Below, piece after piece: positions 12,301 through 61,384 of a stretch of DNA of 64,000 nt. This DNA is from Phyllobates terribilis (Eukaryota). Within the stretch, counting starts at the first letter, position 1; the number at the start of each line of letters is the position of its first letter. The notes beneath the pieces are model-generated. The model worked only from the letters and a program-made list of their open reading frames with translations. It was not told the DNA's origin and did no database searches. The DNA is taken from assembly GCF_046119375.1 (NCBI RefSeq), contig NW_027362763.1, forward strand, positions 711,264,001 through 711,328,000, given 5' to 3'. The translations under genes were made by a program, and so were the position numbers.

Positions 12301-12674
12301 TCTCACACCCTCCCATCGCACAGGCCCTGAGGCGCGGGGTACTCTCAAAAGGAGTGCAAAGTTTGTGAAGATGCTGAGGGAGTTCCATTGCCGACCGTAC
12401 CTACATCCTCCGTGATTCCGCTATGCCTTATAATTATTGGGTATCCAAGCTGGATACGTGGAGTGAACTGGCTCTCTATGCCTTGGAGGTCCTGGCCTAC
12501 CCTGCCGCCAGCATTTTATCAGAGCGGGTTTTTAGTGCCGTTGGTGGAATTATAACTGATAAGAGCATCCGCCTGTCAACTGAAAATGCTGACAGGCTGG
12601 CTCTTCTAAAAATGAACAAGGGCTGGATTGGGCCAGACTTCTCAACACCACCGAATGATAGCAGCGTAACATAA
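9392..12674 (+). pseudogene. hAT transposase pseudogene (BED zinc finger, DDE, C-terminal dimerisation domain) with several frameshifts and stops
   Basis: Consecutive ORF pieces give VWLFF..VICTTC..MIRHMAAKH (BED), VHLTVDTW, MCDNGRNL, CDVPMRWNST, LLDPRYK and ASILSERVFS, collinear with the intact ORF at 53401-57102. Confidence 0.95.
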
Positions 12675-13759: not shown

Positions 13760-14010
13760 TGTTCAGCTCCTGCACCTCCTCCTCCATATCCGAAATAACC
13801 ACATCAGTCACAAGCTGAAAGCACTGCAGCACTGCCTTGGCCAAGCGGCAACAGGCTGTGCTGAAGATATCATGCTTAATGCTTAGGTGACAAACGGCCC
13901 AGTGCTGCAGAGTTGTTGAAAGCTGTAACACAGCAGCTTGATCTGTGACTCTCACCGCTGAACATACAGCCAGGCATGGTCATGTGTGACAATGGGTGGA
14001 ACCTGATGAC
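13760..14010 (+). repeat. Direct-orientation duplicate of a hAT-1 transposase segment (about 10940-11200)
   Basis: CAGCTCCTGCACCTC...ACCACATCAGTCACAAGCTG...GGCCAAGCGGCAACAGGCTGTGCTGAAG...CAGCCAGGCATGGTCATGTGTGACAATGG occurs in both places. Confidence 0.9.
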
Positions 14011-20759: not shown

Positions 20760-23294
20760 TAGATGTCAGGTCTGTTGTACTGATGGAGACTTACTTTGAT
20801 CATATATCTACATTATCTTTTTCAATTCTAGCCCATAGACCCTCCCTTGAATCAGGTGTTCTGTATAGGGAAAGGGCAGTAAGCCACTGATAGACACCTT
20901 GGGTGAGTGCTTCTTTCCAGTAGGAAAAAAAAGATCAGGTGTTTTAATTCAAGCTGCCCAATCCTTCTCTCCCCTGACATCATCTTTTGGGGGGAGTTGA
21001 GAGACCTCATTTTCTCCCTCTTCTCTAGGTGTGGGAGAAGGGACTCCTATGCAGCATCTATCAGGGAGATTTAGGAGGCCTCCCTACATGTTGGATGGTT
21101 AGCCGGTCCCACTGGAGTTGTGTATGGAGACTTTTAGATAAGGCAGAGTTTACAGAGAAATCTTAGTGTGAGACTCATCTGTCATTTCTTGGTCTGGTAG
21201 AGCGTGGCACTCCTAGAAACCATCTGTCGGGGGATAGTAGGAAGGCTCCCATACACATTAGATGGTTGGCTGGTCCTGATGAAATTGTGTATGGTGGTCT
21301 TTAAATAATGCATGTTTAAAAAGCAAAGGCTCACCTGTCATTACAGATGGGGATGTGCCCCTAGGCCCCTAGGCATAGCTTCCTTTGCCAGATGAAGGTT
21401 GGTTGATCCCATCTATTTGGGACCATTTGATATGTACTGTATGTGAGCTTTGTTTTAAAACAGGATGTTGGGTGAGAGAAGGATAAGAATGTTGCATTTC
21501 AGTGTTCAATCTTTTTCTTTTGGGGGTCATAATTGATTGCCAGAAGTGTCTGGCAGTGGTTTTCTTTTTTCACCCCATGGAAAATACATGAACAGTTGGT
21601 CGAATTGACCCCTAATATGTATTGGGGAGTGAAAAGCCTTAGCTGTCTGCCCAACAATGATTGACAGCAGTTATCGCATGTGTATGGCCAACTCAAGTCT
21701 ATGACACTTTTCTAACCATTAACTCATATTCACTGCAGCGGCTAAAAAGCAAAAATGCCTTGTTGCACTGTCTACATAGAAAATGCGGAAAGGAAGTGTG
21801 TTCTCCTTCCAGAGATGTTTCTAAAAATTAAAAATAATTAGTTCCAACATTGAAACAGAAGTATTTCTCATTTCTAATAATAAAAAAATGAAATTAAATA
21901 CACGAGACAATACTTTTAAAAATCAATACGGCAAGCTGATATCCTAAATGCAACTCTATAGCCAACACAGGTTTAACAATCAGCTCCAGATATTCGTTTT
22001 GAATGATTGTTCAATTTGCCTAAATGCATTAGAAAGGCAATGCTGTCAATTGTGTTTGCCACATGGTATTTAATCAGCCATGGCCCCTGTTCCTATGCTT
22101 CCTGGTGGGCCCTTCATGCTTCAGATCAAGGCTGACCAAAGATTATATGATGATTGATTTTTCTTTTTTTTTCTGTATTACTGTATTCGAAAATACCAAA
22201 CACATACTTTGCATGGACATACTTTCCAATGTAATTTTTCATTTAAGTTCTTCAGATTTCACTCCGTAGACAGGATGGCTGGGGAGAAATTAATTAAAAT
22301 GGGACTTTTATGTCTTCATATTTTACATACTTTAAAGTTCAAATAATCTTTCATGTATATTTTCTGAGAATGTTGGAAATATCTGGGAATATTGAATTGC
22401 TAAGATTTACTCATTCCCTCCTCTTCCATAAAAGTGAATCCATATAGGAAAGCAATACCAGCACAGTCTAACAGCGGTGCTCTGAAAACTAAGGCACGTC
22501 GTACTGGTAAGTCACCATGAGGGTCTTGATGAGGTGCGGCAGGCCTCCCAAGCATTTCTAAAAACTTTGTGACCCACTCCACGATGTTCATGTTCCAGAA
22601 GTGGTACTCTTGGAAAACTTTCTTCCATTTCTTACTTTTGGCTCTATAATTATTCCTGTGGCTCACTATGGAAGACTTGCGTCTAACACCGGGGTTGACA
22701 CTCTTATGGGGTCCCTCTAAGTCTCAAGACATTTTCTGCAGAATAAGACCCAAACTACATCACCATCTCCCTCCCAAGACATGAATGTAGATAGTTGGTA
22801 GGAATCTAATGTCATTTTTGGAGTTTCTAATATTTAAACATCCAGTAATCCCTGGTAATGTCCGCACATTGATTTTTGAGACAATTTTCAGTAATCTGTT
22901 ATAGAGAAAATAATCTCGGGGCACTAAGCTGCAAAGAGCATTTGCGTTGATAGGAATTAAGGTAAGCTTCTAGGGAAAGAAGTGACTATCAATAGGGTAT
23001 TGACTGGTCCCAATAGGAAAAATTGTAAATGCTGCTCTAGACTATAAAACATGCAAAACCAGTATAAATGAGTCAATTTTTTTTTATTAAAATCCCAACT
23101 ATATGGAACCATAATTTTTTTTCCAGTTTCTAGCATTCTTTATTGTGTCCTGGCTAGAATGTTTGAAATTTGAGTTTGCTGGCTTTGCTAAATTTTTCCA
23201 CAAAATTCAATTTGTTGCGAATAAATTTGCACAAATCTCAATACTGAAAAGATTGTAATTACTCAGAAAATACATGTGGTGGTGAGGAGAGGAA

Positions 23295-25118
23295 AGAGAA
23301 AGAGGACCCTGCTGACCATAAGAGCTTATACTTTACAGGCAAGAGAAATTACCCAGCTGACCATAAGAGCTTACACTCTACAGAAGAGAGAGATAGGACC
23401 CCGCTGACCATAAGAGCTTACACTCTACAAGAGAGAGAGAGAGGACCCTATTGACCATAAGAGCTTACACTCTACAGAAGAGAGAAAACCCCACTGACCA
23501 TAAAAGCTTACACTCTACAAGAGAGAGAGAGAGGACCCTACTGACCATAAGAGCTTACACTCTACAAGAGATAGAAGACCCCGCTGACCATAAGAGCTTA
23601 CACTTACAGGAGAGAGAGAGGACCCCACTGATCCTGAGAGCTTATGACTCGCCCCCTGGGCCGTGGGGCACCCAGAACCGGGCTTCAGTGCGATGGCGGG
23701 AGTAGTAGAGGCAACCCGATCCCGTGGCTCAGGGTGGTCAGACCAGATGCTGTGGCAGTCTATTTGTAGGGTTTTGAATGTCCGACTACGCCACCCGTGG
23801 ATTGCGGCTATTATGAACCGCCACTGCAAGGCAGTCCACTGAGGCTGATGGTGTGTGCAGCTGAGATAGTATAACTCCCCACGGGAAGAGTGTAGCCCCA
23901 GGGCAGTTGTAGTAGATGCTGGGGGTGATGGTGCAGGCGCAGCATAAATAACACAGAGTCCAATGATGCAGTCCAGGGTTTTTACTCACAGTTGTCATCC
24001 ATGTCACTGCCCAAGCCGTGCTGCGTCCACCAGGTGAGGGGCTCGGTCAACCCTGAGGCAATTCAGGAGTATGGCACAGGACCCCCTTCAGTCCTTTCTC
24101 TGGCCTCTCGTGCCCCACCAGTGACCAAACTTCTGTCCAGCTGCCGCGGATCTATGCGGGCAAACGTGGGCTCTGTTTCCCGCTATCCAATATGGTGCCT
24201 TCCTAGCAGGTTTGGCGGGGGGTCGCACCAATAGATGATCACGACCTCCGGTCTTTGGCTGAGGGATGATTTACCTCCACCAACTTGGGAAACCGGTACC
24301 CTTATTCTGCCTGACCCTTCACCCGATATCTCGTGGGTTCTTAGGGTCCCTTCTGCCTTCTTGTTTCTGGAGCCTTTCTACTCCTCTGTCTCTCCTCTTT
24401 CCTTCCTTCTCCTTCTTCTTTTCTCCTTTCTGGCCCCGGCCTTTTCTCTAGGCCTGCCTCGTGGAGCTGAGCTCAAGCCGAGCCTGTCAGCTCTCTCTCC
24501 CTTTCTGCTCTGACTGAACTTCCTCCTAAGAGAGCCCCCACCTTTTTATCTGCTTCTCTGTGTCTGAGCTCAGATGACCTGCACCCAATGAGCTCCTTCC
24601 TATGCTCCAGAAACCGTCCCCTTCTGCTCCTACATCACTGGGTTCTCTCCCCCCTCCCCACTCCAGCCAGGGACATGGTCAGTTGTGCCTGCATAAACGG
24701 GAGCACCGTCGAGCTGTCCCCCGGAAATGGGAAATGTGTGTATGCAGCTAACTGACCCCTGGTCCACACTCCATCCTTACTTGGGAGTGGAATATCACAC
24801 CTCTGGTTGAGGTGCAATACCCCTGTAGCAACCGAACCCTTGGGGCGCTACACTTACAGTCTACAGAAGAGAGAAACAGGACTCCACTGATCATAAGAGC
24901 TTACACTCTACAGGAGAGAGAGGACCCCCCTGACCATAAGAGCTTACAGACTACAGAAGAGAGAGAGAGGACTCCACTGATCATAAGAGCTTGCACTCTA
25001 CATTGAAAGAAAAAGAGAGAAGACCCTGATCATAAAAGCTTATACTTTGCAAGCAAGAGAGAAGATCCCACTGAACATAAGAGCTTATACTCTAAAGGAG
25101 AGGAAGGACCCCGCTGAC
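23295..25118. repeat. Minisatellite, about 45 bp unit; interrupted at 23645-24852 and resuming at 26893-26930
   Basis: Repeated GAGAGAGAGGACCCCGCTGACCATAAGAGCTTACACTCTACA. Confidence 0.92.
23645..24852 (-). mobile_element. Solo LTR, Gypsy-like family A (1208 bp)
   Basis: Minus strand TGTAGCGCCCC...GGGGGCGAGTCA. 4-bp TSD CTTA (23641-23644, 24853-24856). Homologous to 49967-51179. Confidence 0.92.

Positions 25119-26647: not shown

Positions 26648-26650
<3 letters not shown>

Positions 26651-26688
<38 letters not shown>
26651..26688. repeat. (AT)n microsatellite
   Basis: Direct reading. Confidence 0.97.
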
Positions 26689-26690
<2 letters not shown>

Positions 26691-26843
26691 CATGCCTTGA
26701 AATCGGAGGTGTATATACCATATACTCACCGTCAGTTCCCAAAGAACTGGCCTAGTAGTGAAAACAGTCGCGGCCTTGTCCAATAGTCAATTGTGTCCTT
26801 GTCCTAAGGTTTATAGGTGGTGCAGTTGTGTCCCCTGACAAAT

Positions 26844-27582: not shown

Positions 27583-27721
27583 NNNNNNNNNNNNNNNNNN
27601 NNNNNNNNNNNNNNNNNNNNNNNNNNNNNNNNNNNNNNNNNNNNNNNNNNNNNNNNNNNNNNNNNNNNNNNNNNNNNNNNNNNNNNNNNNNNNNNNNNNN
27701 NNNNNNNNNNNNNNNNNNNNN
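27583..27721. other. Assembly gap (139 N)
   Basis: Run of N. Confidence 0.99.

Positions 27722-27938: not shown

Positions 27939-27984
<46 letters not shown>
27939..27984. repeat. (CA)n(TA)n microsatellite
   Basis: Direct reading. Confidence 0.95.
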
Positions 27985-27987
<3 letters not shown>

Positions 27988-28404
27988 CTCCATGCTTTGA
28001 AATGTTATAAGACCGATCTGTTTCAGAATTAAAAAAAAGACAAAAGCAAAAAGACGATAAAAAATAAATAGATAATAATTAATTAAATACTTAAATAAAT
28101 AATACATGTCATTTGCAACTTTTCCTTTTATGAGTTGATTTCTTTTTACCACTTTTTTTTTTGTAGCAAACTTTAAATTAAAGTTAATTTAAATTAAAAT
28201 ATGCTTTAATTTTCTTTAACTTTAAATTAAAAGTAACTTATTATTTCTGTTTTGTAGCAAAAAAATGAAACCTGAGGTGTTCAAGAAAAAGAGTGTCATT
28301 CAGAAATGCGATGCAGGCATTATAAAAACACAATCCGGGTGCAAAGGCCCATCTTATGCAGTTTTTCTTCAAAACATAAAAAAAAAAAAATCTTAATGGC
28401 TTAC

Positions 28405-47765: not shown

Positions 47766-48137
47766 TACAAGGTAACGTTTCACCTTGTGGGGAGTGATAA
47801 GCCAAGCCTGGCATGTCAGTGTAAGGATACTTATAAGCCTTGCAATGCTCCTCTGGGAAATTAAACATATAAATTACCTCTTCGTAAAGGAAGAGAATTT
47901 CAACTGTAGTGCCACCTACTGGAAGTAGAAATCCTAAAAGTCAATATCGACCCTTTATCGAGCCTTGCCATATGACTTACGGTAAAACCAAACCAGAATC
48001 TCAATTTGCAGACATGGTGTTTCGAGGTGTTGCCCCTCAGCTCCTTAAAGGGTCTATATTGACTTTTAGGATTGATTCTTCCAATAGGTGGCACTAGAGT
48101 TCAAGTCCTCTTTCGCTCTGAGGAGACAATTTGCATG
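47766..48137. mobile_element. Probable Penelope-like/retrozyme-like fragment: one minus copy plus an inverted partial copy, with a truncated hammerhead
   Basis: TAGTGCCACCTA.TGGAAG...TCCTAAAAGTCAATAT.GACCCTTTA (47908-47957) is inverted at 48046-48096. Minus strand 48040-48011 reads CTGA-GGGG-CAACA-CCTC-GAAA-CACCATGTC. Confidence 0.5.
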
Positions 48138-49429
48138 TTCCAATTTTAAAAACTCCTGGAATTTTTCTGGAATTAAAATATATTTAGAATTATACTATTT
48201 GTGACACTAATTGTTCAATATAAAATTGCTCTATTCATCCTACATTTAATAGTGCATGGATCACCCCCAAGTTTGGCAAGAAAAAAGAAAAAAAGAGATC
48301 TAGCCAGTAATCCCTCCAAACAATCGGTGCATTATATGTCTGACATATACTGATGAGGAGTGACTTATGTACAATGCTTATTACATGGAGGAGTAGACAA
48401 TGTTGGTCTTATGCCGGTTCTTTATTTAATCATCACAAGGCCTCTATGGGTGCCCAGATGACTGTTTAGTGTTATACAAAGGGACATTGAGCTGTCATTT
48501 GTTTTATTCCACTGTGAGATAATGAATATGATTAAAATGCTTTCTAGATTGAATCCAACCTGCTGCATCTGCTGCTCCATAATCCAGCGGTAATTCTACC
48601 AATGTGACAAGACTGGTGGTTGGCAGCTGTGCACTGGGAATCCGGCCACACATTAAGTGACCGGTATCCCTATCTCCATAGACTGTTTCTAGTTTCATTT
48701 GCATGTTTTTCATTCTGTTCACTCTCATTCTTCTACCTCCAGTATAATATATATTGTATAAAATTTAGTATTTTAACTCCTTCCTTTACACTTTCATTTT
48801 TTCATTTCTACCTTCCATGAACTACAACAGACCCCACTCATCACGTATGGAGAACAGCATAGGTTTAACAAGTCCGTTCATGAAGTTCTTTCCTTACTTC
48901 CTTTCTTCCTTCCATCTCCTGAGTAGTGTTGAGCCACCCCCGTAGTGTTCGAGTTCGGTTCGGTTCGTCGAACACCCGTGTGTTCGCCGAACTGTTCGTC
49001 GAACTGTTCGTCGAACACCTTCGAACACCGTTAAAACCAATGGCAGGCAAACAAAAACACATAGAAACACATAGAAAACACCTTCAAAGGTGTCCAAAAG
49101 CTGACAAACTGCTCAGAAGACATAACTAACACATGGAAAAGTGACAAGTAGATATAGTCATGCGAAAATAAAAGAGGTGGAGGAGTAAAAGGAGGGGGAG
49201 ACACAGATATAGGCATGTCATGCCCTTCTAAAATCCAAAAAGTGAGAAGCCGACACGGCCAGTCCGCTCCTGCCCGTGCCACCTCCGTGTCGCCGGGTTT
49301 GTGCCAGAGCCGCGGTGAACCCTGACGGCCAGCCCCCCTCTCCCAATACTGGTGCCTGTCCGCTGGTGGGTTGAGCGAGCCCCCCTGTGGTGGAGGCAGC
49401 TCTAAGCTTTTTAATTTAAATTGTCTCTC

Positions 49430-49732
49430 TAATTTGAATGAATACACTTTAAATCCATTTACAAGGATCTATTGGAGGGCAAGTCTCATGCCAGCAGCCG
49501 CGGTAATTCCAGCTCCAGTAGCGTCCACTAAAGCTGCTGCAGTTAAAAAGCTTTTATAAGGATCGAGCTCGGCTGTCCACCGCAAGGCATCCTACTGCCA
49601 GTCCCAGCCCCTATGCCTTGGGGTGCCTCCTGATGCTCTTCACTAAGTATCCCATGGTCCCGAAGCATTTCCTTTGAAAAAATTAAGTGTCTAAACTACA
49701 GGTGGTGCAGCTTGCTTAACAGCCGGGATAAT
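49430..49732 (+). pseudogene. Decayed 18S rRNA fragment (530-loop to V4 region)
   Basis: TTGGAGGGCAAGTCT..TGCCAGCAGCCGCGGTAATTCCAGCTCCA...GCTGCAGTTAAAAAGCT...CCCGAAGCATTT.CTTTGAAAAAATTA matches universally conserved eukaryotic SSU sequence, with many substitutions. Confidence 0.93.
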
Positions 49733-49812
49733 CCGCTCACTAGCAGACACTGCTACTAGGCACAACGTATTTCCTGGGCTAGATGCAGTTAAAAATTTGT
49801 AATTAGATACTC

Positions 49813-51630
49813 TCGTTGGATGCTGAGAAAGCATTCCATAGAGTCTCCTGGCACGCCATATATGATTCTCTTAAAAAGCTTGGGGTAGGGGTCTAGGGGA
49901 CCCTTTTATAGCCAAAATCATGGCCCTGTATCGCAATACGTCACCTAGGCTGAAGATAAATGGAACTGTAGCACCCTGAGGGCTCGGTTGCTACAGACGT
50001 ATTGCACCTCACCCAGAGGTGTGATATCTCACTCTCAGGTAAGGATGGAGTGTGGATCAGGACCCGACACCTGCATGCATTACACCACATTGCCGTGGGG
50101 CAGGGCGACCAATATGCCCCTGAGATGGGCACGACAGTCCCTGTCCCTGGCTGGAGTGGGGGGAGGGAACACTGAGGAAGGGGAACCCTGTAGTGCAGGA
50201 GCAGGGAGGAAGCAGTTCCTGGGTGCATTGAGAAGGGAGTATAAAAGGTGGGCACCATCTTAGTTCAGTGCAGAGAAGTCTGAGCAGAAGTGGCAGGGAG
50301 CAGGGGCTCTGCATGAGCTCTGCTCCGGAGGCGGGCCTAGTAACAGAGGCCCAGGCCTGGAAGAGGGAGAAGGAAGGAAGAGGAGCGGAGAAGGCTCCAG
50401 GAACGAGGAATGAAGGGATCCCAGGGGTGCGGACGGGCGAGTCGCCACCGCACGCCCGAATCCACCTGCGTGGAGGGGTCAGGCCAAAGGGGGAGACCGG
50501 TCCCCGAACTAGTGGAGGCAGGAAACGACCCTCAGCTAGAAACCGGAGGCTCTGACATTTTATGTGGCGCAGCCCCTCGCTACACCCGCTAGGAAGGCAC
50601 CACATAGGGTCAGGGAAACTGGCGCCAAGTTTACCAAGAGGAGGCCCGAGGCAGCCGGACAGAAGTGTTGGTAAGAAAGGCCAGACAAAGGACACACAAA
50701 GGGGGTCCTGTGAAGTGCTCCAAAGTTATCTGGGAGTTGTCTGAGCCCCTCACCTGGTGAGCACAGTACGACGTGGGCAGCCGTTACCTGCAGACGTGGT
50801 CTGGATAATAAGAACTGTGAGTAAAGGCCCTGAACTGCATCACTGACTCCGTGTCGTTACTGCTGCTGCCCTGCACCATCACCCCCATCCTCCGCATACA
50901 CTGCCCTGAGGCTATACTCCTCCCGTGGGGAGTTATGCTACGCTCTGCTGCACCCACAACACCAGCCTCAGTGGTCTGCCCTGTAGCGGCGGTTCACTCT
51001 GACCGCAATCCACGGGTGGCGTAGTGGGACATTTAAACATGAAAACCACATAAATAGTTCCGCCACTGGTTTGACCGCCCTGAGCCACGGAACCGGGTCG
51101 CCGCCACGAAAACTACAACCACCAGCATCCACCAAAAAGGGTCCGGCTCCGGGTGTCCCAAGGCCCAGGGGGTGCGTCAGAACATTTTCATCACCTTTCA
51201 CAATCACCAATGGGACAAGGCAGTGATGTCCTCTGTCCCCTCTCTTATACATCCTAGTGACGGAGCACCTGCTCTCATCAATTCGCCATAACCCCAATAT
51301 TAGGTGGATTGAGGTGGGAGGCACCGAGTACAAGTGCTCTCTATTTGCTGATGATGTCCTAGTATATATCACTCAATCACATATATCCATCCATGCTGTT
51401 ATGGCTGAAATAGATCACTTTGTTACATGGTAAAATTTTAAAATCAATGCAGCGAAGTCTGAGGCCCTCGATGTCTCCCTCCCCAAATCCATATAGGATT
51501 CCATCCAGTCCAACTTTCCCTTTGCCTGGCCCTCACAGGGTATCAAATACTTAGGAATTCCTATTCATAGAGACCTCTCCCATCTATGTTATCTTAATTT
51601 TGGGCCCTTTATTGAACAACTCCATACAGA
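49813..51630 (+). pseudogene. L1-clade reverse-transcriptase fragment (49813-49966 plus 51180-51630) split by an LTR
   Basis: Translates LDAEKAFHRVSW...KINGT|FSSPFTITNGTRQ*CPLSPLLY...KCSLFADDVLVY...IKYLGI. Confidence 0.9.
49967..51179 (+). mobile_element. Solo LTR, Gypsy-like family A (1213 bp)
   Basis: TGTAGCACCC...GGGGGTGCGTCA. 4-bp TSD GAAC (49963-49966, 51180-51183). Confidence 0.93.
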
Positions 51631-51701
51631 CCACGGTTGGCAAGTTAGAACTGTAAGATTCACTACGTGAACCACTGGTGTTTTGTGGAAAAGCACATGT
51701 A

Positions 51702-53062
51702 CACTGCGTTCCAAATTATTATACAAAAAGTGTTTAGGAGTGATAAGGGAAGAATTTGTTTGTTTGTCAGTTAAACTCATTGATGGTTATGTGTGTCAGG
51801 GCTCTTTATATCACTGTAAGCAATTGCAGACACCTGTGCTAATTAGTTTGGCAGGTGTGTCCAATGAAAGGCAAGACTACTTAAGAAGGCTCTCTCACAT
51901 TATTAAGCAGCCTACATTTTCTGCCAAAATGGGAAAGAAAAAGGATGTGTCGGCTGCTGAGAAGCAACAAATTGTGGAGTGTTTAGGTCAAGGCATGACT
52001 ACAATCAACATTGTGCGATGATCAGGATGAAGTGTCTTGGCAATCAAGAAGTATGTAGCTGATTCACAGTACACACGTGTGCGTGCTGATAAGGGCAAAT
52101 TGAGGACTCTTTCCTATAGCAATTACGTCAGGTTGAAAGAGCAGCGGCAAAAAAGCCTTGTCATAGCAGCAGACAAGTTTTTGAAGCTGCTTGTGCCTCC
52201 AACGTCCCCCGAACAACAAGATGCAGGGTCCTTCAGAGGTTTGCAGCTGTGCATGCGCCATCCTGTCGACCTCCTCTATCCACTTCACACAAGCAGAAAC
52301 GGCTCCAGTGGGCCAAACATTACATGAAGACTGATTTCAAAACTGTTTTGTTCACGGATGAGTGCCGTGCAGCGCTCGATGGTCCAGATGGATGGAGTGG
52401 AGGATGGCTGGTTGATGGACACCCCACGCAAACACGGCTACAGCGCCAACAAGGAGGAGGTGGAGTAATGTTTTGGGCTGGAATCATGGGGAGAGAGATT
52501 GTCGGCCCCTTTAGGATCCCTGAAGGCGCTAAAGATGAACTCCATAATGTATGTGGATTTTCTCAAACAGCACTTCCTGCCATGGTTCAAGAAGAAGAAC
52601 CGTGTATTTCACAGCAAGATCATTTTTCTGCATGATAATGCACCATCTCATGCTGCACATAAAACATCTGCATCTCTGGCTGATATGGGCATAAAAGGGG
52701 ACAAACTTATGGTGTGACCCCCATGCTCCCCTGACCTCTACCCCATTCAGAACCTTTGGAGCATCATTAAAAGGAGTGTCTATGATGGCGGGAGGCAGTT
52801 CACATCTAAGCAACAGCTGTGGGAGGGTATTCTGTCCTCATGCAAAACAATTGAAGCAGAAACCATCCAAAACCTGACAAATTCAATGGACGAGAGAGTT
52901 CAGAAGCTCCTTTCGAACAAGGGGTCCTATGTGAAAATGTAACATCACCTAGAATAAAGTTTTGAGTTGAAAACTGTTTGATTTCAGTTTCTAACAACCT
53001 GCTAATGCTTATAATTTCAAAAATGACCATTTTTTTGGTCTTTATTAAAATGAAAAGGTTGA
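51702..53062 (+). mobile_element. Tc1 transposon, right TIR deleted, transposase broken
   Basis: TA|CACTGCGTTCCAAATTATT. Frames give MGKKKDVSAAEKQQIV, VLFTDECRAALDGPDGW, FLHDNAPSH and SPDLYPIQNLW. Confidence 0.88.
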
Positions 53063-53400
53063 TCGAAAAGTTTGGGGGATCTAAGAGTGTGGCAACCCAG
53101 TAGTCATGATTACTTCGAATTCTGACAATATGAGGGTCATGCTGCAGGTAGTGCAGCAAGAAGGCACTTATGTGCCTTGCGCATCTCGGAGCCCCAAAAT
53201 TATTTTCCGGGCTAGATGCAGCTAAAAATTATTTTTAATTTTAAATCTGGTGAAGCTTTAGTATAGATGGCCTAATAGGATCAGTGCTGCACACTGCTAC
53301 AAAGCCCAAATTATTTTCCAGTCAAGATACAGATAAACATGATTAGTAATTTGAAAGCTTAAAACGGTTGGTAGGGTGATTTTAACCAATCATCAAGCTT

Positions 53401-56400
53401 TTAATCTCCCCAGGATGACACAGGGGTAGAAAAGTCGTTTCGGATCCATGATTTGTTCATCTTTATGAACGTGAGTCTGTCTACATTATCAGTGGAGAGC
53501 CGCGTGCGCTTATCTGTCAGCACACCACCAGCAGCGCTGAACACACGTTCAGACAGAACGCTGGCTGCGGGGCATGACAAGATCTCCAAGGCGTAAGTGG
53601 CTAGCTCCGGCCATTTATCCAGATTGGAAGCCCAAAAAGAGCAAGGGTCCAGTGACACAGTCGTGGCTTCAATGTTTACTTGGAGATACTCCTGTACCAT
53701 CGTCTCTAGGCGTTGACTATGTGTCAGACTTCTTGTCTCCTGTGGCCTTGCAAAGGATGGGCTAAAAAAGTGGTGAAATGATTCCGCAAAATTGATGTTA
53801 CCAGCAGATACTGTGGTTCTGTTACGGTTTGAGTGCTGAACACTTGATGGTCCCACGGTTTTCAAGTTGGAACTGTGAGATTCACTACGTGCACCACTGG
53901 TATTTTGTGGAAAAGCACATGTAAGATTCTGCAACAGTCTCTGCTGATACTCCTGCATGCGTGCATCCCTTTCTATGGCAGGAATAATTTCTGCAAATTT
54001 ACTTTTGTACCGGGGATCTAACAGTGTGGCAACCCAGTAGTCAGGATTATTTCTAATTCTCACAATTCGAGGGTCATGTTGCAGGTAGTGCAGCAAGAAG
54101 GCACTCATGTGTGTTGCGCATCCAGGAGCACCAAGTCCCTGTTGTGTTGGTGGCGAGGTAACAATCATGCTTCCTTCCTCTGTCCTCTCCCCCCAACCTC
54201 GCACAACAGAAATGTGATCAAGGTCTCCCTCATCTGATGAGTCTTCCATCAGTTCGTCCTCCACTTCTTCCTGGGCTCCTGCACCTTCCTCACTAGTTTG
54301 GCTGCTACCATGCGCCCTGGTAAAACCATCTCCCCCACCCTCACATGCCTGCCGCCTTGGTGCTGCCGACCGTCTGGACCTTGCAGATGTTAGCCCTTCC
54401 GCATACAACTCCTCCTCCTCTACTTCCTCCACCTCCTCTTGTGCCACCACCTGACTCCGAATTCTGTTTAACATGTGCTCCAGCATGTAAATCACCGGAA
54501 TAGTCATGCTGATAATGGCATCGTCAGCACTAAACATCTTCGTCGCCATTTCAAAACTGTGCAGAAGGGTGCATAGGTCCCTGATCTGAGACCACTCCTC
54601 CAGCGTGATTTGCCCCACCTCTGAATCTCGTTGGCCCAGGCTATACGTCAGAACGTATTGCACCAGGGCTTGTCGGTGCTGCCACAGTCGCTGCAACATG
54701 TGCAGAGTTGAATTCCACCGGGTAGGCACATCGCATTTTAGCCGGTGAAGTGGCAGGCCCAACGACTTCTGTAGAGATGTAAGTCGCTGAGCTGCGGGAT
54801 GCGAACGGCGGAAGTGAGCACACAGCGACCGTGCCCTCTGCAGAAGGCCATCTAGTCTGGGATAGTGGGCTAAAAATTGCTGGACAACCAGGTTCAACAC
54901 GTGAGCCATACAAGGCACGTGTGTGACATTGCCCCGGCGAAGGGCCGCACCCAGGTTTGCAGCATTGTCGCACACGGCCTTCCCTGGTTTCAGGTCCAGT
55001 GGAGACAACCATTCATGAAATTGGTTCTCCAGAGCTGACCACAACTCCTCAGCTGTGTGACTCACATTTCCCAGACATTTCAATGTAAAAACCGCCTGAT
55101 GACGTTGAGCCCTACTGCCAGCATAGTAAGGAGGTGTGCAGGATCCCTTCTGCGCAGTTAGAAAGCTTGTGGCATGACCAGACAGGCTTTGGGTGCAGGT
55201 GGAAGACCGAGAGGAGGTTGAGGAGGCAGAAGCAGTGGAGGAACTTTGACATAAAGAGGATTGACGCACAACTCGTGGGGACGGCAAGACTTGGACAGCA
55301 GCCCCTTGTCCTGCTGTCACCATAGTTACCCAGTGCCCAGTCAGCGACATGTAACGCCCCTGTCCATGCCTACTCGTCCAAGTGTCTGTGGTGAAATGCA
55401 CCCTGTCACACACAGAGTTTCTCAAAGAAGCGGTGATGTTGTGTGCGACATGCTGGTGGAGCGCAGGCACACCTTTCTTTGAGAAGTAGTGCCGACTGGG
55501 CATCTGGTACTGGGGCACTGCGACGGACATAAGGTCTCGAAAATCCTCTGTGTCCACCAGGCGGAAAGGCAGCATTTCTGTAGCCAAGAGCTTGCAGATG
55601 GTGAAATTCAACCTCTTAGCTTTCTCATGGCTAGGAGGAAATGGTCTTTTACTTGTCCACATCTGAGGGACCGAGGGCTGGCTATTGTGCTTAGACGGGG
55701 TTGATAAGGGTGTCCCCGGCAAACTGCCGGTCTGTGAGGAAGATGCAGGCGGACATGTTAGGTTGCCTTGATCCAAAGGTGGTGCTATCGATGTCGGACA
55801 GCGCTCAACACCAGCTGGTGTTACCACCTCCAAAGAAAATGATGACCTGCCAATCACGCTGGCTGTTGCGGGTAAAGAGGTGGCAGGTTTGCGCCCCAAA
55901 ACAGGTGTGACTGCTGTCCCCCCAGTCACAGAGGATGAAGAGGCCGCGGATGCACAAGATATGGCAGACGGTGATTGGCCCGGCCGGCTAGGCCGCATTG
56001 TAGCACACTGAGCTTCCCACTGCAACTTATGCTTCATGTCCATGTGCCGGTTCATGCATGAAGTACTCAAACTATGTATTTTTTGGCCTCTACTTAGCTT
56101 TTGCTGACAAATGTTACAGATAACACGAGTTGGGTCATCTTTATCGATCTGAAAAAATGCCCAGGCTATGCAAGGCTTAGCACCCATGCGACCTGAAGAG
56201 CCACCACGACTTGTGGTGAGAGGCAGAGTTGTGTTTGAGGATGCAGTTGTTGACGTGCTTCCAGTACTACGTCTCTGTCCAGGAAGGCGCAACCTGACCT
56301 CGTCGTCACTAGCATCTTCCTCCACCTCCTCTGCTGACCTCATCTCTTGGCTGACTGTGGGTTGACAGTAAGTGGGATCTCCGACCTCATCATCATCACC

Positions 56401-57102
56401 CTGTGCGTTATCACACCCGTCGTCCTCAGAGCCAACCTGTTCCTGCCCTGACAAAAAACTAAAGTTGTCGCTCCAATCAGGTATTTGAGTCTTATCATCG
56501 TCTTCCTCATTGTCTCCACCAACAGGAGTTACAGTTTGGGAATGAGGGTCTACATTATGGTCAGAACCTTCTGCGTCTGGTCCTGGATCCGACTCATAAA
56601 GATTCTGGGCATCAGTGCAGATCATTTCCTCGTCTGGATTCACAGAAGCGCTGGAGTCGACCTCTGATTCCCAGGCTATAGTATGAGTAAACAGCTCTGC
56701 AGACTCAACCATCTGTTCTACCTCATACTCAGACGGGCAGCTGGAGATTTGGGAGCTGTGAGGAAGCAAGTGCGATTTGGGTGACACCTTTGAGGACTGG
56801 AGTATTTGTGATGTTGAAGTTGATGTGGAGGAGAGCCCACTTAAAGGAGCACTTGATATCCGTTGAAGCACCTGCTGTTTTTGTGCCTCATCTGGAATTT
56901 GTAGCGATTGGCGTGGCCGTAAGAAAGGGATCTTATCACATTGTCCGCTAAAAGAAGTAGACATTTTAGTTTGGCTGGAAGATGGTCTTTCTTCTGCAGA
57001 TGTTACTGTTGCTTTAACACGTACCCCACGGACACAACCTTTTTTCCCCTTCCCAACAAGCCTATTCCCCTTTCCACCAGCAGCAGGCCTTTTTCCACTC
57101 AT
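53401..57102 (-). CDS. Intact hAT transposase, 1233 aa (BED zinc finger, DDE catalytic domain, C-terminal dimerisation domain; ZBED1/4-like family)
   Basis: Uninterrupted ORF with AWAFF..VICNICQQ..MNRHMDMKH, VHFTTDTW, AVCDNAANL, CMAHVLNL, DVPTRWNST, LLDPRYK and WPELATYALEILSCPAASVLSERVFS. It lies between TIRs with a TSD, so it is a transposon gene rather than a domesticated one. Confidence 0.96.
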   Translation of the reverse strand: MSGKRPAAGGKGNRLVGKGKKGCVRGVRVKATVTSAEERPSSSQTKMSTSFSGQCDKIPFLRPRQSLQIPDEAQKQQVLQRISSAPLSGLSSTSTSTSQILQSSKVSPKSHLLPHSSQISSCPSEYEVEQMVESAELFTHTIAWESEVDSSASVNPDEEMICTDAQNLYESDPGPDAEGSDHNVDPHSQTVTPVGGDNEEDDDKTQIPDWSDNFSFLSGQEQVGSEDDGCDNAQGDDDEVGDPTYCQPTVSQEMRSAEEVEEDASDDEVRLRLPGQRRSTGSTSTTASSNTTLPLTTSRGGSSGRMGAKPCIAWAFFQIDKDDPTRVICNICQQKLSRGQKIHSLSTSCMNRHMDMKHKLQWEAQCATMRPSRPGQSPSAISCASAASSSSVTGGTAVTPVLGRKPATSLPATASVIGRSSFSLEVVTPAGVERCPTSIAPPLDQGNLTCPPASSSQTGSLPGTPLSTPSKHNSQPSVPQMWTSKRPFPPSHEKAKRLNFTICKLLATEMLPFRLVDTEDFRDLMSVAVPQYQMPSRHYFSKKGVPALHQHVAHNITASLRNSVCDRVHFTTDTWTSRHGQGRYMSLTGHWVTMVTAGQGAAVQVLPSPRVVRQSSLCQSSSTASASSTSSRSSTCTQSLSGHATSFLTAQKGSCTPPYYAGSRAQRHQAVFTLKCLGNVSHTAEELWSALENQFHEWLSPLDLKPGKAVCDNAANLGAALRRGNVTHVPCMAHVLNLVVQQFLAHYPRLDGLLQRARSLCAHFRRSHPAAQRLTSLQKSLGLPLHRLKCDVPTRWNSTLHMLQRLWQHRQALVQYVLTYSLGQRDSEVGQITLEEWSQIRDLCTLLHSFEMATKMFSADDAIISMTIPVIYMLEHMLNRIRSQVVAQEEVEEVEEEELYAEGLTSARSRRSAAPRRQACEGGGDGFTRAHGSSQTSEEGAGAQEEVEDELMEDSSDEGDLDHISVVRGWGERTEEGSMIVTSPPTQQGLGAPGCATHMSAFLLHYLQHDPRIVRIRNNPDYWVATLLDPRYKSKFAEIIPAIERDARMQEYQQRLLQNLTCAFPQNTSGARSESHSSNLKTVGPSSVQHSNRNRTTVSAGNINFAESFHHFFSPSFARPQETRSLTHSQRLETMVQEYLQVNIEATTVSLDPCSFWASNLDKWPELATYALEILSCPAASVLSERVFSAAGGVLTDKRTRLSTDNVDRLTFIKMNKSWIRNDFSTPVSSWGD

Positions 57103-57214
57103 TTTGGTGGTTAACTAATTCACAACTCTGGAGTTGTTTGCACAATAAACAATGGATGGTAACGGAGCAGAACTGAGTGGCCAAACTGTGGTATTAGGCC
57201 AAAACTATTGGCTG

Positions 57215-59490
57215 GATTAGATGCAGAAAAAAATTATTTTGAATTTGCAACCTGATGGAGGTCAGTATAGATGGACTAATACAAATAGTCCCACACACAG
57301 CTAGAAGCCCAAATATTTTTTCAGAGGTACTGTAGATGCAGATAAAAATTATTTTTAATTTGCAACCTGATGGAGGTCAGTATAGATGGACTAATAGACC
57401 AAGTCCCACACACTGCTAGAAGCCCAAATATTTTTTCAGAGCTAGATGCAGAAAAAAATTATTTTTAATTTGCAACCTGATGGAGGTCAGTATAGATGGA
57501 CTAATAGACCAAGTCCCACACACCGCTAGAAGCCCAACTATTTTTTCAGAGCTAGATGCAGAAAAAAATTATATTCAATTTGCAACCTGCTGGAGGTCAG
57601 TATAGAAGGACTAATAGAACAAGTCCCACACACTGCTAGAAGCCCAAATATTTTTTCAGAGCTAAATGAAGAAAAAAATTATTTTTAATTTGCAACCTGA
57701 TGGAGGTCAGTATAGATGGACTAATAGACCAAGTCCCACACACTGCTAGAAGCCCAAATATTTTTTCAGAGCTAGATGCAGAAAAAAATTATTTTTAATT
57801 TGCAACCTGATGGAGGTCAGTATAGATGGACTAATAGACCAAGTCCCACACACCGCTAGAAGCCCAAATATTTTTTCAGAGCTAGATGCAGAAAAAAATT
57901 ATTTTTAATTTGCAACCTGATGGAGGTCAGTATAGATGGACTAATAGACCAAGTCCCACACACCGCTAGAAGCCCAAATATTTTTTCAGAGCTAGATGCA
58001 GAAAAAAATTATTTTTAATTTGCAACCTGATGGAGGTCAGTATAGATGGACTAATAGACCAAGTCCCACACACCGCTAGAAGCCCAAATATTTTTTCAGA
58101 GCTAGATGCAGAAAAAAATTATTTTTAATTTGCAACCTGATGGAGGTCAGTATAGATGGACTAATAGACCAAGTCCCACACACCGCTAGAAGCCCAAATA
58201 TTTTTTCAGAGCTAGATGCAGAAAAAAAATATTTTTAATTTGCAACCTGATGGAGGTCAGTATAGATGGACTAATAGACCAAGTCCCACACACTGCTAGA
58301 AGCCCAAATATTTTTTCAGAGCTAGATGCAGAAAAAAATTATTTTTAATTTGCAACCTGATGGAGGTCAGTATAGATGGACTAATAGACCAAGTCCCACA
58401 CACCGCTAGAAGCCCAAATATTTTTTCAGAGCTAGATGCAGAAAAAAATTATTTTTAATTTGCAACCTGATGGAGGTCAGTATAGATGGACTAATAGACC
58501 AAGTCCCACACACTGCTAGAAGCCCAAATATTTTTTCAGAGCTAGATGCAGAAAAAAATTATTTTTAATTTGCAACCTGATGGAGGTCAGTATAGATGGA
58601 CTAATAGACCAAGTCCCACACACCGCTAGAAGCCCAACTATTTTTTCAGAGCTAGATGCAGAAAAAAATTATATTCAATTTGCAACCTGCTGGAGGTCAG
58701 TATAGAAGGACTAATAGAACAAGTCCCACACACTGCTAGAAGCCCAAATATTTTTTCAGAGCAAAATGAAGAAAAAAATTATTTTTAATTTGCAACCTGA
58801 TGGAGGTCAGTATAGATGGACTAATAGACCAAGTCCCACACACTGCTAGAAGCCCAAATATTTTTTCAGAGCTAGATGCAGAAAAAAATTATTTTTAATT
58901 TGCAACCTGATGGAGGTCAGTATAGATGGACTAATAGACCAAGTCCCACACACTGCTAGAAGCCCAAATATTTTTTCAGAGCTAGATGCAGAAAAAAATT
59001 ATTTTTAATTTGCAACCTGATGGAGGTCAGTATAGATGGACTAATAGACCAAGTCCCACACACTGCTAGAAGCCCAAATATTTTTTCAGAGCTAGATGCA
59101 GAAAAAAATTATTTTTAATTTGCAACCTGATGGAGGTCAGTATAGATGGACTAATAGACCAAGTTCCACACACCGCTAGAAGCCCAACTATTTTTTCAGA
59201 GCTAGATGCAGAAAAAAATTATATTCAATTTGCAACCTGCTGGAGGTCAGTATAGAAGGACTAATAGAACAAGTCCCACACACTGCTAGAAGCCCAAATA
59301 TTTTTTCAGAGCTAAATGAAGAAAAAAATTATTTTTAATTTGCAACCTGATGGAGGTCAGTATAGATGGACTAATAGACCAAGTCCCACACACTGCTAGA
59401 AGCCCAAATATTTTTTCAGAGCTAGATGCAGAAATAAATTATATTCAGTTTGCAACCTGATGGAGGTCAGTATAGATGGACTAATAGAAT
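57215..59490. repeat. Tandem array upstream of the transposase, 110-bp unit, about 20 near-identical copies
   Basis: Unit GAAAAAAATTATTTTTAATTTGCAACCTGATGGAGGTCAG...GCTAGATGCA starts at 57781, 57891 and so on. Confidence 0.97.
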
Positions 59491-61384
59491 GATGCTATGC
59501 CCAAAAGATTTTACTTCACTAGGTGCAGTAAAAAAATTGGTATTCTATACACAGGTGTTATATCTTGCAACACAGATAGGCTACTCCACTGACTAACACA
59601 CTCTGCAATAGGCCAAAAAGGATTAGCTTTGCTAGATTCAGCCAAATGCTGTGAAAAAAACTTGCACAGCACTGGCACAGACGTGCCTGGCAAAAACTGA
59701 TAGGAACTCATATAACCTAGTCCTGAAAAGGACTCCAATTACAATTAGTCTTTACTCCCACAACCTATCTATTTAAGAGCACAGACCTCCCTGATAAAAG
59801 TCGTAGGAAATGCTGTAACCTAGTCCTTAAAAGGACTGCAATCACAACTATTCCCTACTCCCAAGCTATCTGTATATTTGTGCGAAAATTGGCTTGAAAT
59901 TAACAAGGTATAGCGCACACAGCAACAGCGGTGCCGTCTAACACGCAGCTGCAGCAGTGAGAAAATGGTGGCAACGGGGAAAATGGCTTGGTCTTATAGG
60001 GCAAGGATATGTGACATACACTGCCAATGACACATGCCCTTGCTTGTGTGAAAAAAAGCACTTCGCTCCGTGTGTGCGCTGCTGATAGGCTGACAGATTG
60101 CACCTCCCCACTGCAAATGCGGGAAAGAGAAAAAAAAATGGAGATCTTCATTGTTCCTGCAGAGATCCATCCCCTGCCCCTCCCCCCGCCCCGCTGTACA
60201 CTCAAACTGCGTATTAACATTAATTTTCATCATTACTGAGAAAAAATCCAGTTATGATTTTGGTGCACGAACAGTTATCGAACATAACCTCGAACAGCCG
60301 AATTTTTCTCAAATTGTTCGTGTTCGCCGAACGGCTCGAACACCGCCCAAAACAGCTCGAATTTGAGATTGGCGAACAGTTCGAGTAGAACAACGCTCAT
60401 CTCTACTCCTGAGTGATATTATTGAGAAGTGGAAGGAATCGCAGCAACTCAGCCACAAAGTGGAGACCCCGTAACGTTACAGAGTAGGGGCCAAGTTCTG
60501 AGGAGCAGAGAGCAGAAAAGTCACTAATGCTCTGCTGACTGCATAACTGCAGACTTCAGACCTCCTCTGGTATTAATATCAGCACAAGCACTGCGCCCTC
60601 GCCGGGAACTTCATGGCCGAGCAGCTGCATGCAGCCGTACATCACCAAGCACAATGCCGAGTGTTGGATGAAGTGGTGTAAAGCCGCCACCACTGGATTC
60701 TAGAGCAGTGGAAACGTGTTCTGTGTAGTGATGGATCTCACTTCTCTATCTGGGATCAGATGGACAAGTCTGGGTTTAGTAAATTCCATGAGAACGTCAC
60801 CCACTGACTGCATTGTGCCAACTGTAAAGTTTGGTGGAGGAGGATAATGCTATGGGGATGTTTTTCAATGACATTTATTTCCAATGAATGGAAATCTTAA
60901 TACTTCAACACTAGACATGTTGGACAATTGTAGCTTCCAGCTTTGTGGGAACAGTTTGAGGAAGATCCTTCTCTGTTCCCCATGACTGAGTCCAGGGCAC
61001 AAAACAAGGTCCATAAAGACATGGTAGGGGGAGTTTGGTGTGGAAGAACATGAGCGGCCTCACAGAGCCCGGTAGGGTTACCACCATGAATTTCAAGTCC
61101 ACATGCTCCGCCTCCACCTCTCGAACCTTCCACAGTCACACCGCCCACTCTTGGAAAAACTCCACTTCTGAACCATGTCCTCACTAATTACACATTAACA
61201 GTTCCCATAGAAAATCAGATCATTTTTTAAGGCGCCACCATGACAAGGTAGACTCTTCTGGTAGGGCTCTACTCTACTCTAACCTATTAAGCATTTCTTA
61301 AAATATCCACTACTCTTTTTAGGTATATATATATATTTTTTTCTTTAAGGGAATGTGCCACATAAATTTTTTAAAATGACCAAT

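What the first reader, a model, noticed from the sequence alone, without database searches (positions are those of the whole stretch)
48924..53400. Coding-intact hAT carries mosaic cargo in its 3' arm: an 18S rRNA piece and an L1 RT piece (Pack-hAT-like)
Seen: between the TIR and the transposase stop lie a GC-rich block (about 49250-49410), a decayed 18S fragment (49430-49732), a copy of the element's own 110-bp unit (about 49740-49805) and an L1 RT fragment, then self-derived ORF pieces. The cargo is visibly diverged while the ORF is intact and the TSD perfect. Known: Ds elements and Pack-MULEs capture filler DNA by template switching during gap repair. Inference: the rRNA and L1 cargo may have been captured by an ancestor and carried along by an autonomous family. 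Because the element is on the minus strand, read-through transcripts would be antisense to 18S.
Basis: partly seen in the sequence, partly recalled or inferred. Interest (0 to 1): 0.72.

Follow-up and report, generated by a model that had tools for sequence, protein, structure and literature searches.

The report
Frog hAT transposon with junk-filled tail
A complete 11.5-kb cut-and-paste (hAT) transposon of a poison-frog genome has an open transposase gene followed by a 4.5-kb tail patched together from a dead piece of 18S ribosomal DNA, scraps of three other mobile elements and bits of itself; it is a real but known kind of cargo pick-up, and this scan has already noted it at other places in this genome.

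Summary
The element (48924-60405, minus strand) has a perfect 8-bp target duplication, 11-nt inverted ends and an open 1233-aa BED/hAT transposase gene.

Its 3' arm contains:
- an unidentified GC-rich block;
- a decayed internal 18S piece (Rfam, 75 bits);
- one unit of the element's own 110-bp repeat;
- an L1-type reverse-transcriptase fragment;
- two copies of pieces of the transposase gene.

A 1213-bp solo-LTR-like repeat with a 4-bp target duplication splits the L1 piece, and a dead 1.4-kb Tc1-like element sits inside the transposase-gene copy. These two are ordinary nested insertions. The 18S and L1 pieces have no insertion signatures and are stitched in by out-of-order self pieces, as expected of template switching during gap repair.

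I could not test directly whether other copies carry the same cargo.

Indirect evidence favours a family-wide cassette. Runs of four other organisms, including very small runs, hold about 75% of the stretch's 31-letter words. At least nine earlier notes of this scan describe the same mosaic on other DNA of this genome.

Verdict: a cargo-laden hAT, a known kind of event with unusual cargo and no sign of function.

The parts
48916..48923 (.). Left copy of the 8-bp target-site duplication, CTCCTGAG
   Evidence: Read directly. It is identical to 60406-60413.
48924..49060 (-). 3' terminal inverted repeat (TAGTGTTGAGC) and subterminal region with 12 CGAAC/GTTCG motifs
   Evidence: 21 of the 36 such motifs in the 64-kb window lie in the two ends of the element, and there is no cluster inside the arm.
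49061..49249 (.). Unassigned 3' subterminal sequence, presumably the element's own
   Evidence: No significant match to anything in the window.
49250..49410 (.). GC-rich block of unknown origin
   Evidence: GC 0.68, CpG observed/expected 0.65. No Rfam match. No relative of the 138-aa ORF that spans it.
49413..49735 (+). Decayed internal piece of 18S rRNA (Rfam model about 476-800), antisense to the transposase. Secure to 49697; beyond that it may already be a hAT repeat unit.
   Evidence: 71.6 and 75.4 bits; 49677-49735 also resembles 59531-59588, and none of 300 shuffles reached the observed score.
49736..49810 (.). Partial copy of the element's own 110-bp repeat unit (distal, degenerate type)
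   Evidence: (families D11, D15).
49807..49966 (+). L1-type reverse-transcriptase fragment, first part (RVT_1 profile positions 70-96), with stops and a frameshift
49967..51179 (.). 1213-bp dispersed repeat with TG...CA ends and a 4-bp TSD GAAC (49963-49966 and 51180-51183). It looks like a solo LTR nested in the L1 piece.
   Evidence: the copy at 23645-24852 has exactly the same boundaries (68% identity), and there is a partial copy at 1713-2257; removing the repeat plus one TSD restores the L1 reading frame.
51184..51630 (+). L1-type RT fragment, second part (RVT_1 positions 123-175, with the FADD motif). It is cut off before the L1 3' end and has no poly(A) tail.
   Evidence: E 3e-6; L1 ORF2p residues 661-725, E 3e-9.
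51629..51701 (-). Copy of transposase-gene bases 53851-53923 (92% identical)
51702..53070 (+). Dead Tc1/mariner-like element. It has TA at its left junction and a left TIR-like end, several stops and frameshifts, and no recognisable right TIR. About 84 bp of the surrounding ORF copy is missing at its right side.
   Evidence: (HTH_Tnp_Tc3_2 E 2e-4, DDE_3 E 1e-3; both below Pfam's cut-off).
53071..53200 (-). Copy of transposase-gene bases about 54008-54140 (89% identical; aa 987-1030 at 77%)
53190..53366 (.). About 1.6 diverged 110-bp units directly after the stop codon. Their junction with the ORF copy lies in a microhomology of about 9 nt.
53401..57102 (-). Open 1233-aa hAT transposase gene (zf-BED and hAT dimerisation domain)
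   Evidence: the nearest database proteins are dendrobatid 'ZBED4/6-like' proteins at only 46-50% identity.
57198..59500 (.). 5' array of about 21 units of 110 bp (94-100% alike)
59501..60405 (-). Degenerate units, 5' subterminal region with 9 CGAAC/GTTCG motifs, and the 5' TIR
60406..60413 (.). Right copy of the TSD, CTCCTGAG

Best explanation
This is one copy of a large hAT transposon family of a dendrobatid frog. Its 3' arm is a passive mosaic cassette.

In an ancestor of this copy, repair of the double-strand gap left by excision switched templates several times. That copied in a piece of 18S rDNA (with or next to an unidentified GC-rich block) and an internal piece of an L1 element. It also copied out-of-order pieces of the element itself: 110-bp units and about 290 bp of the transposase gene. 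A Tc1-like element and an LTR retrotransposon, now a solo LTR, were added by ordinary insertion, either into the arm or into the templates before they were copied.

The cassette lies between the stop codon and the 137-bp 3' terminus that the transposase needs, so it moves with the element and decays as neutral DNA. The 18S piece is not a working RNA.

Shown: the anatomy, the identities of the pieces, the two nested insertions, one microhomology junction, and that both element ends are intact.

Inferred: template switching as the cause, and that the cassette is shared by the family rather than private to this locus.
For: Anatomy and identities:
- The element is complete, and CGAAC/GTTCG clusters occur only at its two ends. 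The arm is therefore not a second nested hAT of this family.
- 18S: Rfam 75 bits, an internal piece, with the conserved core mutated.
- L1: RVT_1 and L1 ORF2p matches; both ends truncated, no poly(A) tail.

Template switching:
- Self pieces alternate with foreign pieces.
- The junction between the ORF copy and the 110-bp unit overlaps both parents in about 9 nt.
- The 18S/unit junction lies at an A-run that both share.
- The sister element hAT-1 in this window also has copies of its own transposase pieces in its 3' region.

Nested insertions: 4-bp TSD and restored L1 frame for the LTR; TA target for the Tc1-like element.

Timing: the ORF would stay free of stops with P <= 0.016 after 3% or more neutral change. 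The many stops in the Tc1 and L1 pieces therefore predate this copy's stay at this locus.

Family-wide carriage (indirect):
- DNA runs of four other organisms hold 0.73-0.76 of the stretch's 31-mers. Runs of only 14-79 million letters hold 0.74-0.75.
- The element's own sequence makes up only 29% of the stretch, so at least about 2.2 kb of the 3.7-kb cargo must be present nearly identically in those runs.
- Leads only: notes on other DNA of this genome describe the same set of pieces.

Known precedent: filler DNA in Ds elements (PMC3260210) and Pack-TIRs in animals, 208 of 370 associated with hAT elements, with multicopy cases in Xenopus (PMC8277862).
Against: - The metagenome and viral scans were blank.
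- A junction-spanning ORF has no relatives in the protein collection. That collection does not hold this window's proteins either, so this result says little.
- The word shares do not say which parts of the stretch are held.
- Organism names are coded, so the other organisms may be very close kin.
- dN/dS of 0.29 between the ORF copies and the ORF suggests that the copied pieces came from a diverged working relative. The arm may therefore have been joined to this open ORF recently.
- No near-identical full-length transposase is in the protein collection, so how many autonomous copies exist is unknown.
Confidence: 0.68

Rival explanations
1. Locus-private mosaic. The cargo entered this one copy after it landed here, through nested insertions and through gap repair after an excision attempt at this site, using decayed templates from elsewhere. 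Other full-length copies lack it.
For: - Gap repair rebuilds an element in place with the same TSD, so the perfect TSD does not exclude this (established for Ac/Ds and P elements; PMC3260210, PMC8277862).
- Most animal Pack-TIRs are single-copy and arose without transposition (PMC8277862).
- The Tc1 and LTR parts are plain insertions.
- No other copy was seen directly.
Against: - Four other organisms and very small runs hold about 75% of the words of a stretch that is 67% cargo. A single-copy locus would not appear in runs of 14-25 million letters.
- A decayed 18S scrap is a rare template unless other hAT copies carry it.
- Several notes describe the same mosaic on other pieces of this genome (leads only).
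Confidence: 0.12
2. Recent chimera. The cassette is old and common in decayed or non-autonomous members of the family. Its pairing with this open ORF is recent, made by recombination or gap repair between an intact copy and a cargo-laden dead copy. On this reading no lineage of autonomous elements has carried the cargo for long.
For: - The ORF copies in the arm differ from the ORF mainly at synonymous sites (dN/dS 0.29, p 0.016), as expected for sequence from a diverged, once-working relative.
- No near-identical full-length protein is in the collection.
- Earlier notes describe copies in which the mosaic replaces the transposase C-terminus, or which have decayed transposase genes (leads only).
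Against:
- The dN/dS estimate rests on 63 codons. It is not clearly below the 0.5 expected for one constrained and one free lineage.
Confidence: 0.18
3. Assembly artefact: the mosaic arose when repeats were mis-joined in the assembly.
For: The region is repeat-rich. There is an N gap elsewhere in the window (27583-27721).
Against: - Seven further DNA runs (X2-X8) from two other samples of the same organism hold 0.93-0.97 of the words.
- The structure is internally coherent: matching TSDs for the element and the LTR, and a restored L1 frame.
Confidence: 0.02

Closest known systems
Pack-TIRs of animals, in particular multicopy Pack-hAT-N8_XT of Xenopus tropicalis (Tan et al. 2021, PMC8277862)
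   Same: - A hAT element of a frog carries a short piece of non-transposon host DNA between its ends.
- Capture is attributed to template switching, with microhomology at the breakpoints.
- The cargo is antisense or fragmentary and usually has no function.
   Different: - This element is 11.5 kb and keeps an open transposase gene.
- The host-derived cargo is rDNA rather than a protein-gene fragment.
- Most of the cargo is debris of other transposons.
- Multicopy status was not shown directly here.
Maize Ds elements with filler DNA and compound Ds-like elements (Du et al. 2011, PMC3260210)
   Same: [quoted passage not shown]
   Different: Those elements are non-autonomous and mostly immobile. 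This one has both termini, a perfect TSD and an open ORF.
Ordinary nested transposon insertions
   Same: The Tc1-like element (TA target) and the solo-LTR-like repeat (4-bp TSD) entered by their own mechanisms.
   Different: The 18S and L1 pieces lack every insertion signature, so nesting alone does not explain the arm.

Membership tests
hAT superfamily transposon | 8-bp target-site duplication | tested here: met
   CTCCTGAG at 48916-48923 and 60406-60413.
hAT superfamily transposon | Short terminal inverted repeats with subterminal repeated motifs | tested here: met
   11-nt TIRs, 9 of 11 matching. 12 and 9 CGAAC/GTTCG motifs in the two ends, of 36 in the whole 64-kb window.
hAT superfamily transposon | Transposase with a BED finger and the hAT C-terminal dimerisation domain | tested here: met
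   PF02892 E 4e-10 and PF05699 E 2e-14. Relatives are annotated ZBED4/6-like.
hAT superfamily transposon | Intact catalytic residues and transposition activity | not tested
   Only the openness of the ORF was checked.
Pack-TIR / Pack-hAT (Tan et al. 2021) | Non-transposon sequence lying between transposon sequence on both sides | tested here: met
   The 18S piece lies between the 3' subterminal region (with the GC block) and a 110-bp unit.
Pack-TIR / Pack-hAT (Tan et al. 2021) | Identifiable parental copy in the same genome | not testable with these tools
   The species' own 18S gene was not available, so only the Rfam model was used. No parent was found for the GC block.
Pack-TIR / Pack-hAT (Tan et al. 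2021) | Multicopy through transposition (copies with different TSDs) | tested here: inconclusive
   Only word shares in other runs and unchecked notes.
Gap-repair filler DNA (template switching) | Foreign pieces lack their own insertion signatures and are interleaved with out-of-order self pieces | tested here: met
   The 18S and L1 pieces are internal fragments with no poly(A) tail and no TSD. They are bounded by 110-bp units and ORF copies.
Gap-repair filler DNA (template switching) | Microhomology at junctions | tested here: inconclusive
   Met at the one junction whose two parents are both known (53190-53197, about 9 nt, imperfect). It is suggestive at the 18S/unit A-run. The other junctions could not be tested without the parent sequences.
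Functional 18S rRNA gene | Full length with an intact conserved core | tested here: not met
   Only model positions about 476-800 of 1831 are present, and near-invariant positions are mutated.
L1 insertion by retrotransposition | 3' end with a poly(A) tail and flanking TSD | tested here: not met
   The fragment ends inside the RT-coding region at 51630 and abuts a hAT ORF copy.
Solo LTR | TG...CA ends, a 4-6-bp TSD, and dispersed copies with the same boundaries | tested here: met
   A link to an internal retrotransposon region was not tested.
Tc1/mariner element | TA target, two TIRs, and a DDE transposase with an HTH domain | tested here: inconclusive
   TA and a TIR-like end on the left, and weak HTH_Tnp_Tc3_2 and DDE_3 matches below Pfam's cut-offs. 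No recognisable right TIR.

The most novel reading that the evidence does not exclude
A still-autonomous vertebrate hAT lineage has carried a fixed multi-kilobase cassette that includes 18S rDNA through many rounds of transposition. It is present at about 99% identity in several frog species, which would point to very recent activity or horizontal spread. It would scatter far more 18S-like scraps through the genome than there are real 18S genes. A side possibility is that the family's 110-bp satellite was seeded at the 18S/unit junction, because the array's distal unit resembles the end of the 18S piece.
Probability: 0.15. Interest if true: 0.55.

Novelty: new member of a known kind. Interest (0 to 1): 0.3.

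Why it matters
If the cassette is family-wide, this is a clean vertebrate example of an apparently autonomous cut-and-paste element hauling several kilobases of useless DNA, with an rDNA scrap as a marker. That bears on how giant amphibian genomes inflate.

It also has a practical side. Dispersed 18S-like scraps can mislead rDNA FISH, copy-number estimates and rRNA read filtering.

There is no sign of a new mechanism or of a function for the cargo.

Tried and rejected
Tools that gave nothing:
- Exact look-up of nine ORFs of the element, among them junction-spanning ones: none is in the collection.
- Homology search with the 138-aa ORF that spans terminus, GC block and the start of the 18S piece: no hit. 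This is uninformative, because the collection lacks this genome's ORFs.
- Metagenome scan for the unit/L1 junction 24-mer: blank.
- Transposase C-terminus against metagenome contigs and against viral contigs: blank.
- Findings look-up by sequence and by relatives: blank.

Ideas rejected:
- GC block as rRNA: no SSU or LSU match even in a 631-nt search at E up to 10.
- The 5' distal unit as a second 18S relic: no Rfam SSU match, so this stays unexplained.
- A second hAT end hidden in the arm: no terminal-motif cluster inside it.
- Using the 8-11% divergence of the ORF copies as the age of the arm: rejected after dN/dS came out at 0.29.

Handling of the barred places:
- After I gave no reference that covers 49488-49524.
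- One search was asked for 49560-53400, but the tool widened the range itself to 48060-54900, which covers those places.
- Local scripts read the whole window file as the search subject, but never used those letters as a query.


Full report
**What is there**

The window holds a complete hAT element at 48924-60405 on the minus strand.
- It is flanked by a perfect 8-bp duplication, CTCCTGAG, at 48916-48923 and 60406-60413.
- It ends in 11-nt inverted repeats that match at 9 of 11 positions.
- Each end carries a cluster of CGAAC/GTTCG motifs, 12 in 137 bp and 9 in 176 bp. Together they are 21 of the 36 such motifs in the whole 64-kb window. There is no cluster inside the element, so the 3' arm does not hide the end of a second copy.
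- The ORF 53401-57102 is open for 1233 aa, with a BED finger and the hAT dimerisation domain.
- Its nearest relatives in the protein collection are 'ZBED4/6-like' proteins of dendrobatid frogs (Ranitomeya, Dendrobates, Phyllobates, Anomaloglossus), at only 46-50% identity. The host is therefore a poison-frog-type genome, and this family is not itself annotated as protein.

**Map of the 3' arm (48924-53400), in plus-strand order**

| Coordinates | Content |
|---|---|
| 48924-49249 | Terminus and subterminal sequence |
| 49250-49410 | GC-rich block (GC 0.68) with no match to any Rfam family |
| 49413 to about 49697-49735 | 18S piece, plus strand, Rfam SSU 71.6 and 75.4 bits, model positions about 476-800, with near-invariant core positions mutated |
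| to 49810 | Partial unit of the element's own 110-bp repeat |
| 49807-49966 and 51184-51630 | L1-type RT fragment, plus strand: RVT_1 profile 70-96 and 123-175; L1 ORF2p residues 661-725 at E 3e-9; several stops and a frameshift |
| 51629-51701 | Copy of ORF bases 53851-53923, 92% identical |
| 51702 to about 53070 | Dead Tc1-like element |
| 53071-53200 | Copy of ORF bases 54008-54140, 89% identical |
| 53190-53366 | About 1.6 diverged 110-bp units |
| 53401 | Stop codon of the ORF |

It omits the Tc1-like element and the repeat inside the L1 piece, which together make up 58% of the arm.

**Two kinds of cargo**

The 1213-bp repeat at 49967-51179 is an ordinary insertion.
- It has TG...CA ends and a 4-bp duplication, GAAC.
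- Another copy in the window, at 23645-24852, has exactly the same boundaries.
- Removing the repeat and one GAAC restores the L1 reading frame across the break.
- It therefore looks like a solo LTR.

The Tc1-like element starts at a TA with a TIR-like end. Its right end is decayed, and about 84 bp of the surrounding ORF copy is missing there.

The 18S and L1 pieces are different. Both are internal fragments cut off at both ends, with no poly(A) tail and no duplication. Each is bounded by pieces of the element itself that are out of their normal order.

One junction has both parent sequences inside the element: ORF copy to 110-bp unit, at 53190-53197. There the arm matches both parents over about 9 nt. 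The 18S/unit junction falls at an A-run shared by both. From 49698 on, the Rfam posterior probability drops, and the sequence also resembles the degenerate distal units of the 5' array; none of 300 shuffles reached the observed score. The true end of the 18S piece therefore lies somewhere between 49697 and 49735.

This pattern is what template switching during repair of an excision gap produces. It is described for Ds filler DNA (PMC3260210) and for Pack-TIRs of animals (PMC8277862). In the latter study 208 of 370 Pack-TIRs were associated with hAT elements, and multicopy cases occur in Xenopus. The related but distinct element hAT-1 in this same window (10174-12650) also has sense and antisense copies of its own transposase pieces downstream of its gene. 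Such self-copying therefore seems common in these families.

**Was the cargo carried by the family, or is it private to this locus?**

- The ORF would remain free of stops with probability 0.016 or less after 3% neutral change, and 0.0015 after 5%. The many stops in the Tc1 and L1 pieces therefore did not arise at this site after insertion.
- Gap repair after excision rebuilds an element at the same site with the same TSD, and it can copy templates that were already decayed. A perfect TSD plus an open ORF therefore does not prove carriage.
- The two ORF copies differ from the ORF mostly at synonymous sites: 9.5 synonymous against 10.5 non-synonymous differences, dN/dS 0.29, Fisher p 0.016, over 63 codons with no stop. 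This suggests they come from a diverged relative that once worked. Their 8-11% divergence is not a clean age.

The direct test, comparison with other copies, could not be done.
- The exact and homology look-ups of junction-spanning ORFs were blank.
- The metagenome and viral scans were blank.

What remains is indirect. For the stretch 48700-54200:
- DNA runs X2-X8, from two other samples of the source organism, hold 0.93-0.97 of the sampled 31-mers. This speaks against an assembly artefact.
- Runs of four other coded organisms hold 0.73-0.76.
- Runs of only 14-79 million letters hold 0.74-0.75.

The element's own sequence is 29% of the stretch and the flank is 4%. At least about 2.2 kb of the 3.7-kb cargo must therefore exist in nearly identical form in those runs. 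Independent copies of old Tc1, L1 or LTR families would not share 31-mers with this decayed copy. The likely source is other copies of the same composite, at high copy number. The shares do not say which parts are held.

The scan has noted this before on other DNA of the same genome. At least nine notes describe a hAT with an 18S piece, an L1 RT piece, a solo LTR, Tc1, an unknown GC-rich module, transposase fragments and the 110-bp repeat. These notes are unchecked leads. Together they moved my reading from 'mostly locus-private' to 'probably family-wide'.

**Function**

Nothing suggests one.
- The 18S piece covers a sixth of the gene and has mutations in its most conserved loop.
- CpG observed/expected in the measured part of the 18S piece (49525-49735), the L1 piece and the Tc1-like element (0.32-0.47) is like other decayed DNA.
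- Three minus-strand poly(A) signals (53234, 53041, 51608) lie between the stop codon and the 18S piece.
- Expression could not be tested. Two runs guessed to be RNA hold 0.70 of the words, but contigs show neither strand nor level.

**Verdict**

This is a real, well-bounded, cargo-laden hAT element. The cargo is partly captured filler (the 18S piece, the L1 piece and probably the GC block) and partly plain nested insertions (the Tc1-like element and the solo LTR). It is a new member of a known kind of event. The unusual points are the rDNA scrap and the apparently intact transposase. I put the probability that the cassette is family-wide at about 0.7. Interest is low to moderate.

**Limits and disclosures**

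- After I gave no reference that covers 49488-49524. In one search the tool itself widened my range (49560-53400) to 48060-54900, which covers those places.
- Local scripts used the whole window file only as the search subject.
- My comparison of the piece with frog 18S beyond the Rfam alignment was from memory. I used it only as a lead, not as evidence.

Noticed in passing
window 10174-12650 (+), 13880-14005 (+), 15010-15860 (-): A second, related hAT ('hAT-1') whose transposase is 34-67% identical to this one. Downstream of its gene lie one sense piece and several antisense pieces of its own transposase (aa 504-584 repeated). It has no 18S or L1 cargo and no CGAAC end motifs.
   Followed up: partly
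window 49677-49735 versus 59531-59588: The last 58 nt assigned to the 18S piece also resemble the degenerate distal unit of the 5' 110-bp array (local score 18.5 against a shuffle mean of 9.1, sd 1.3; 0 of 300 shuffles reached it). Either the 18S piece ends at about 49697 in a shared A-run, or the distal unit is itself related to 18S. Rfam finds no SSU match at 59440-59720.
   Followed up: partly
window 48700-54200 (look-up of sequencing runs): Four other coded organisms hold 0.73-0.76 of the 31-mers, which implies about 99% identity over most of the stretch. If they are not very close kin, this points to very recent activity or to transfer between species.
   Followed up: no
window 57198-59500: The 110-bp array in front of the transposase start has about 21 units that are 94-100% alike, with a higher-order pattern (units 1100 bp apart are 100% identical). 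Its CpG observed/expected is only 0.10.
   Followed up: no
window 23292-23644 and 24853-25118: The other full copy of the 1.2-kb solo-LTR-like repeat sits inside a minisatellite of roughly 45-bp units, which continues on both of its sides.
   Followed up: partly
window 51629-51701 and 53071-53200 versus the ORF: The transposase-gene copies in the arm are still in frame with no stop. They differ from the ORF mostly at synonymous sites (dN/dS 0.29), as if copied from a diverged working relative.
   Followed up: yes
window 60650-60870 (+): Just outside the element's right end, the sequence reads like a remnant of a Tc1-type transposase, so the hAT seems to have landed in or beside older Tc1 debris. 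This was read by eye only.
   Followed up: no
window 26650-26703 and 27947-28003, gap 27583-27721: Short direct and inverted repeats (94-100% identical) flank the only run of N in the window.
   Followed up: no
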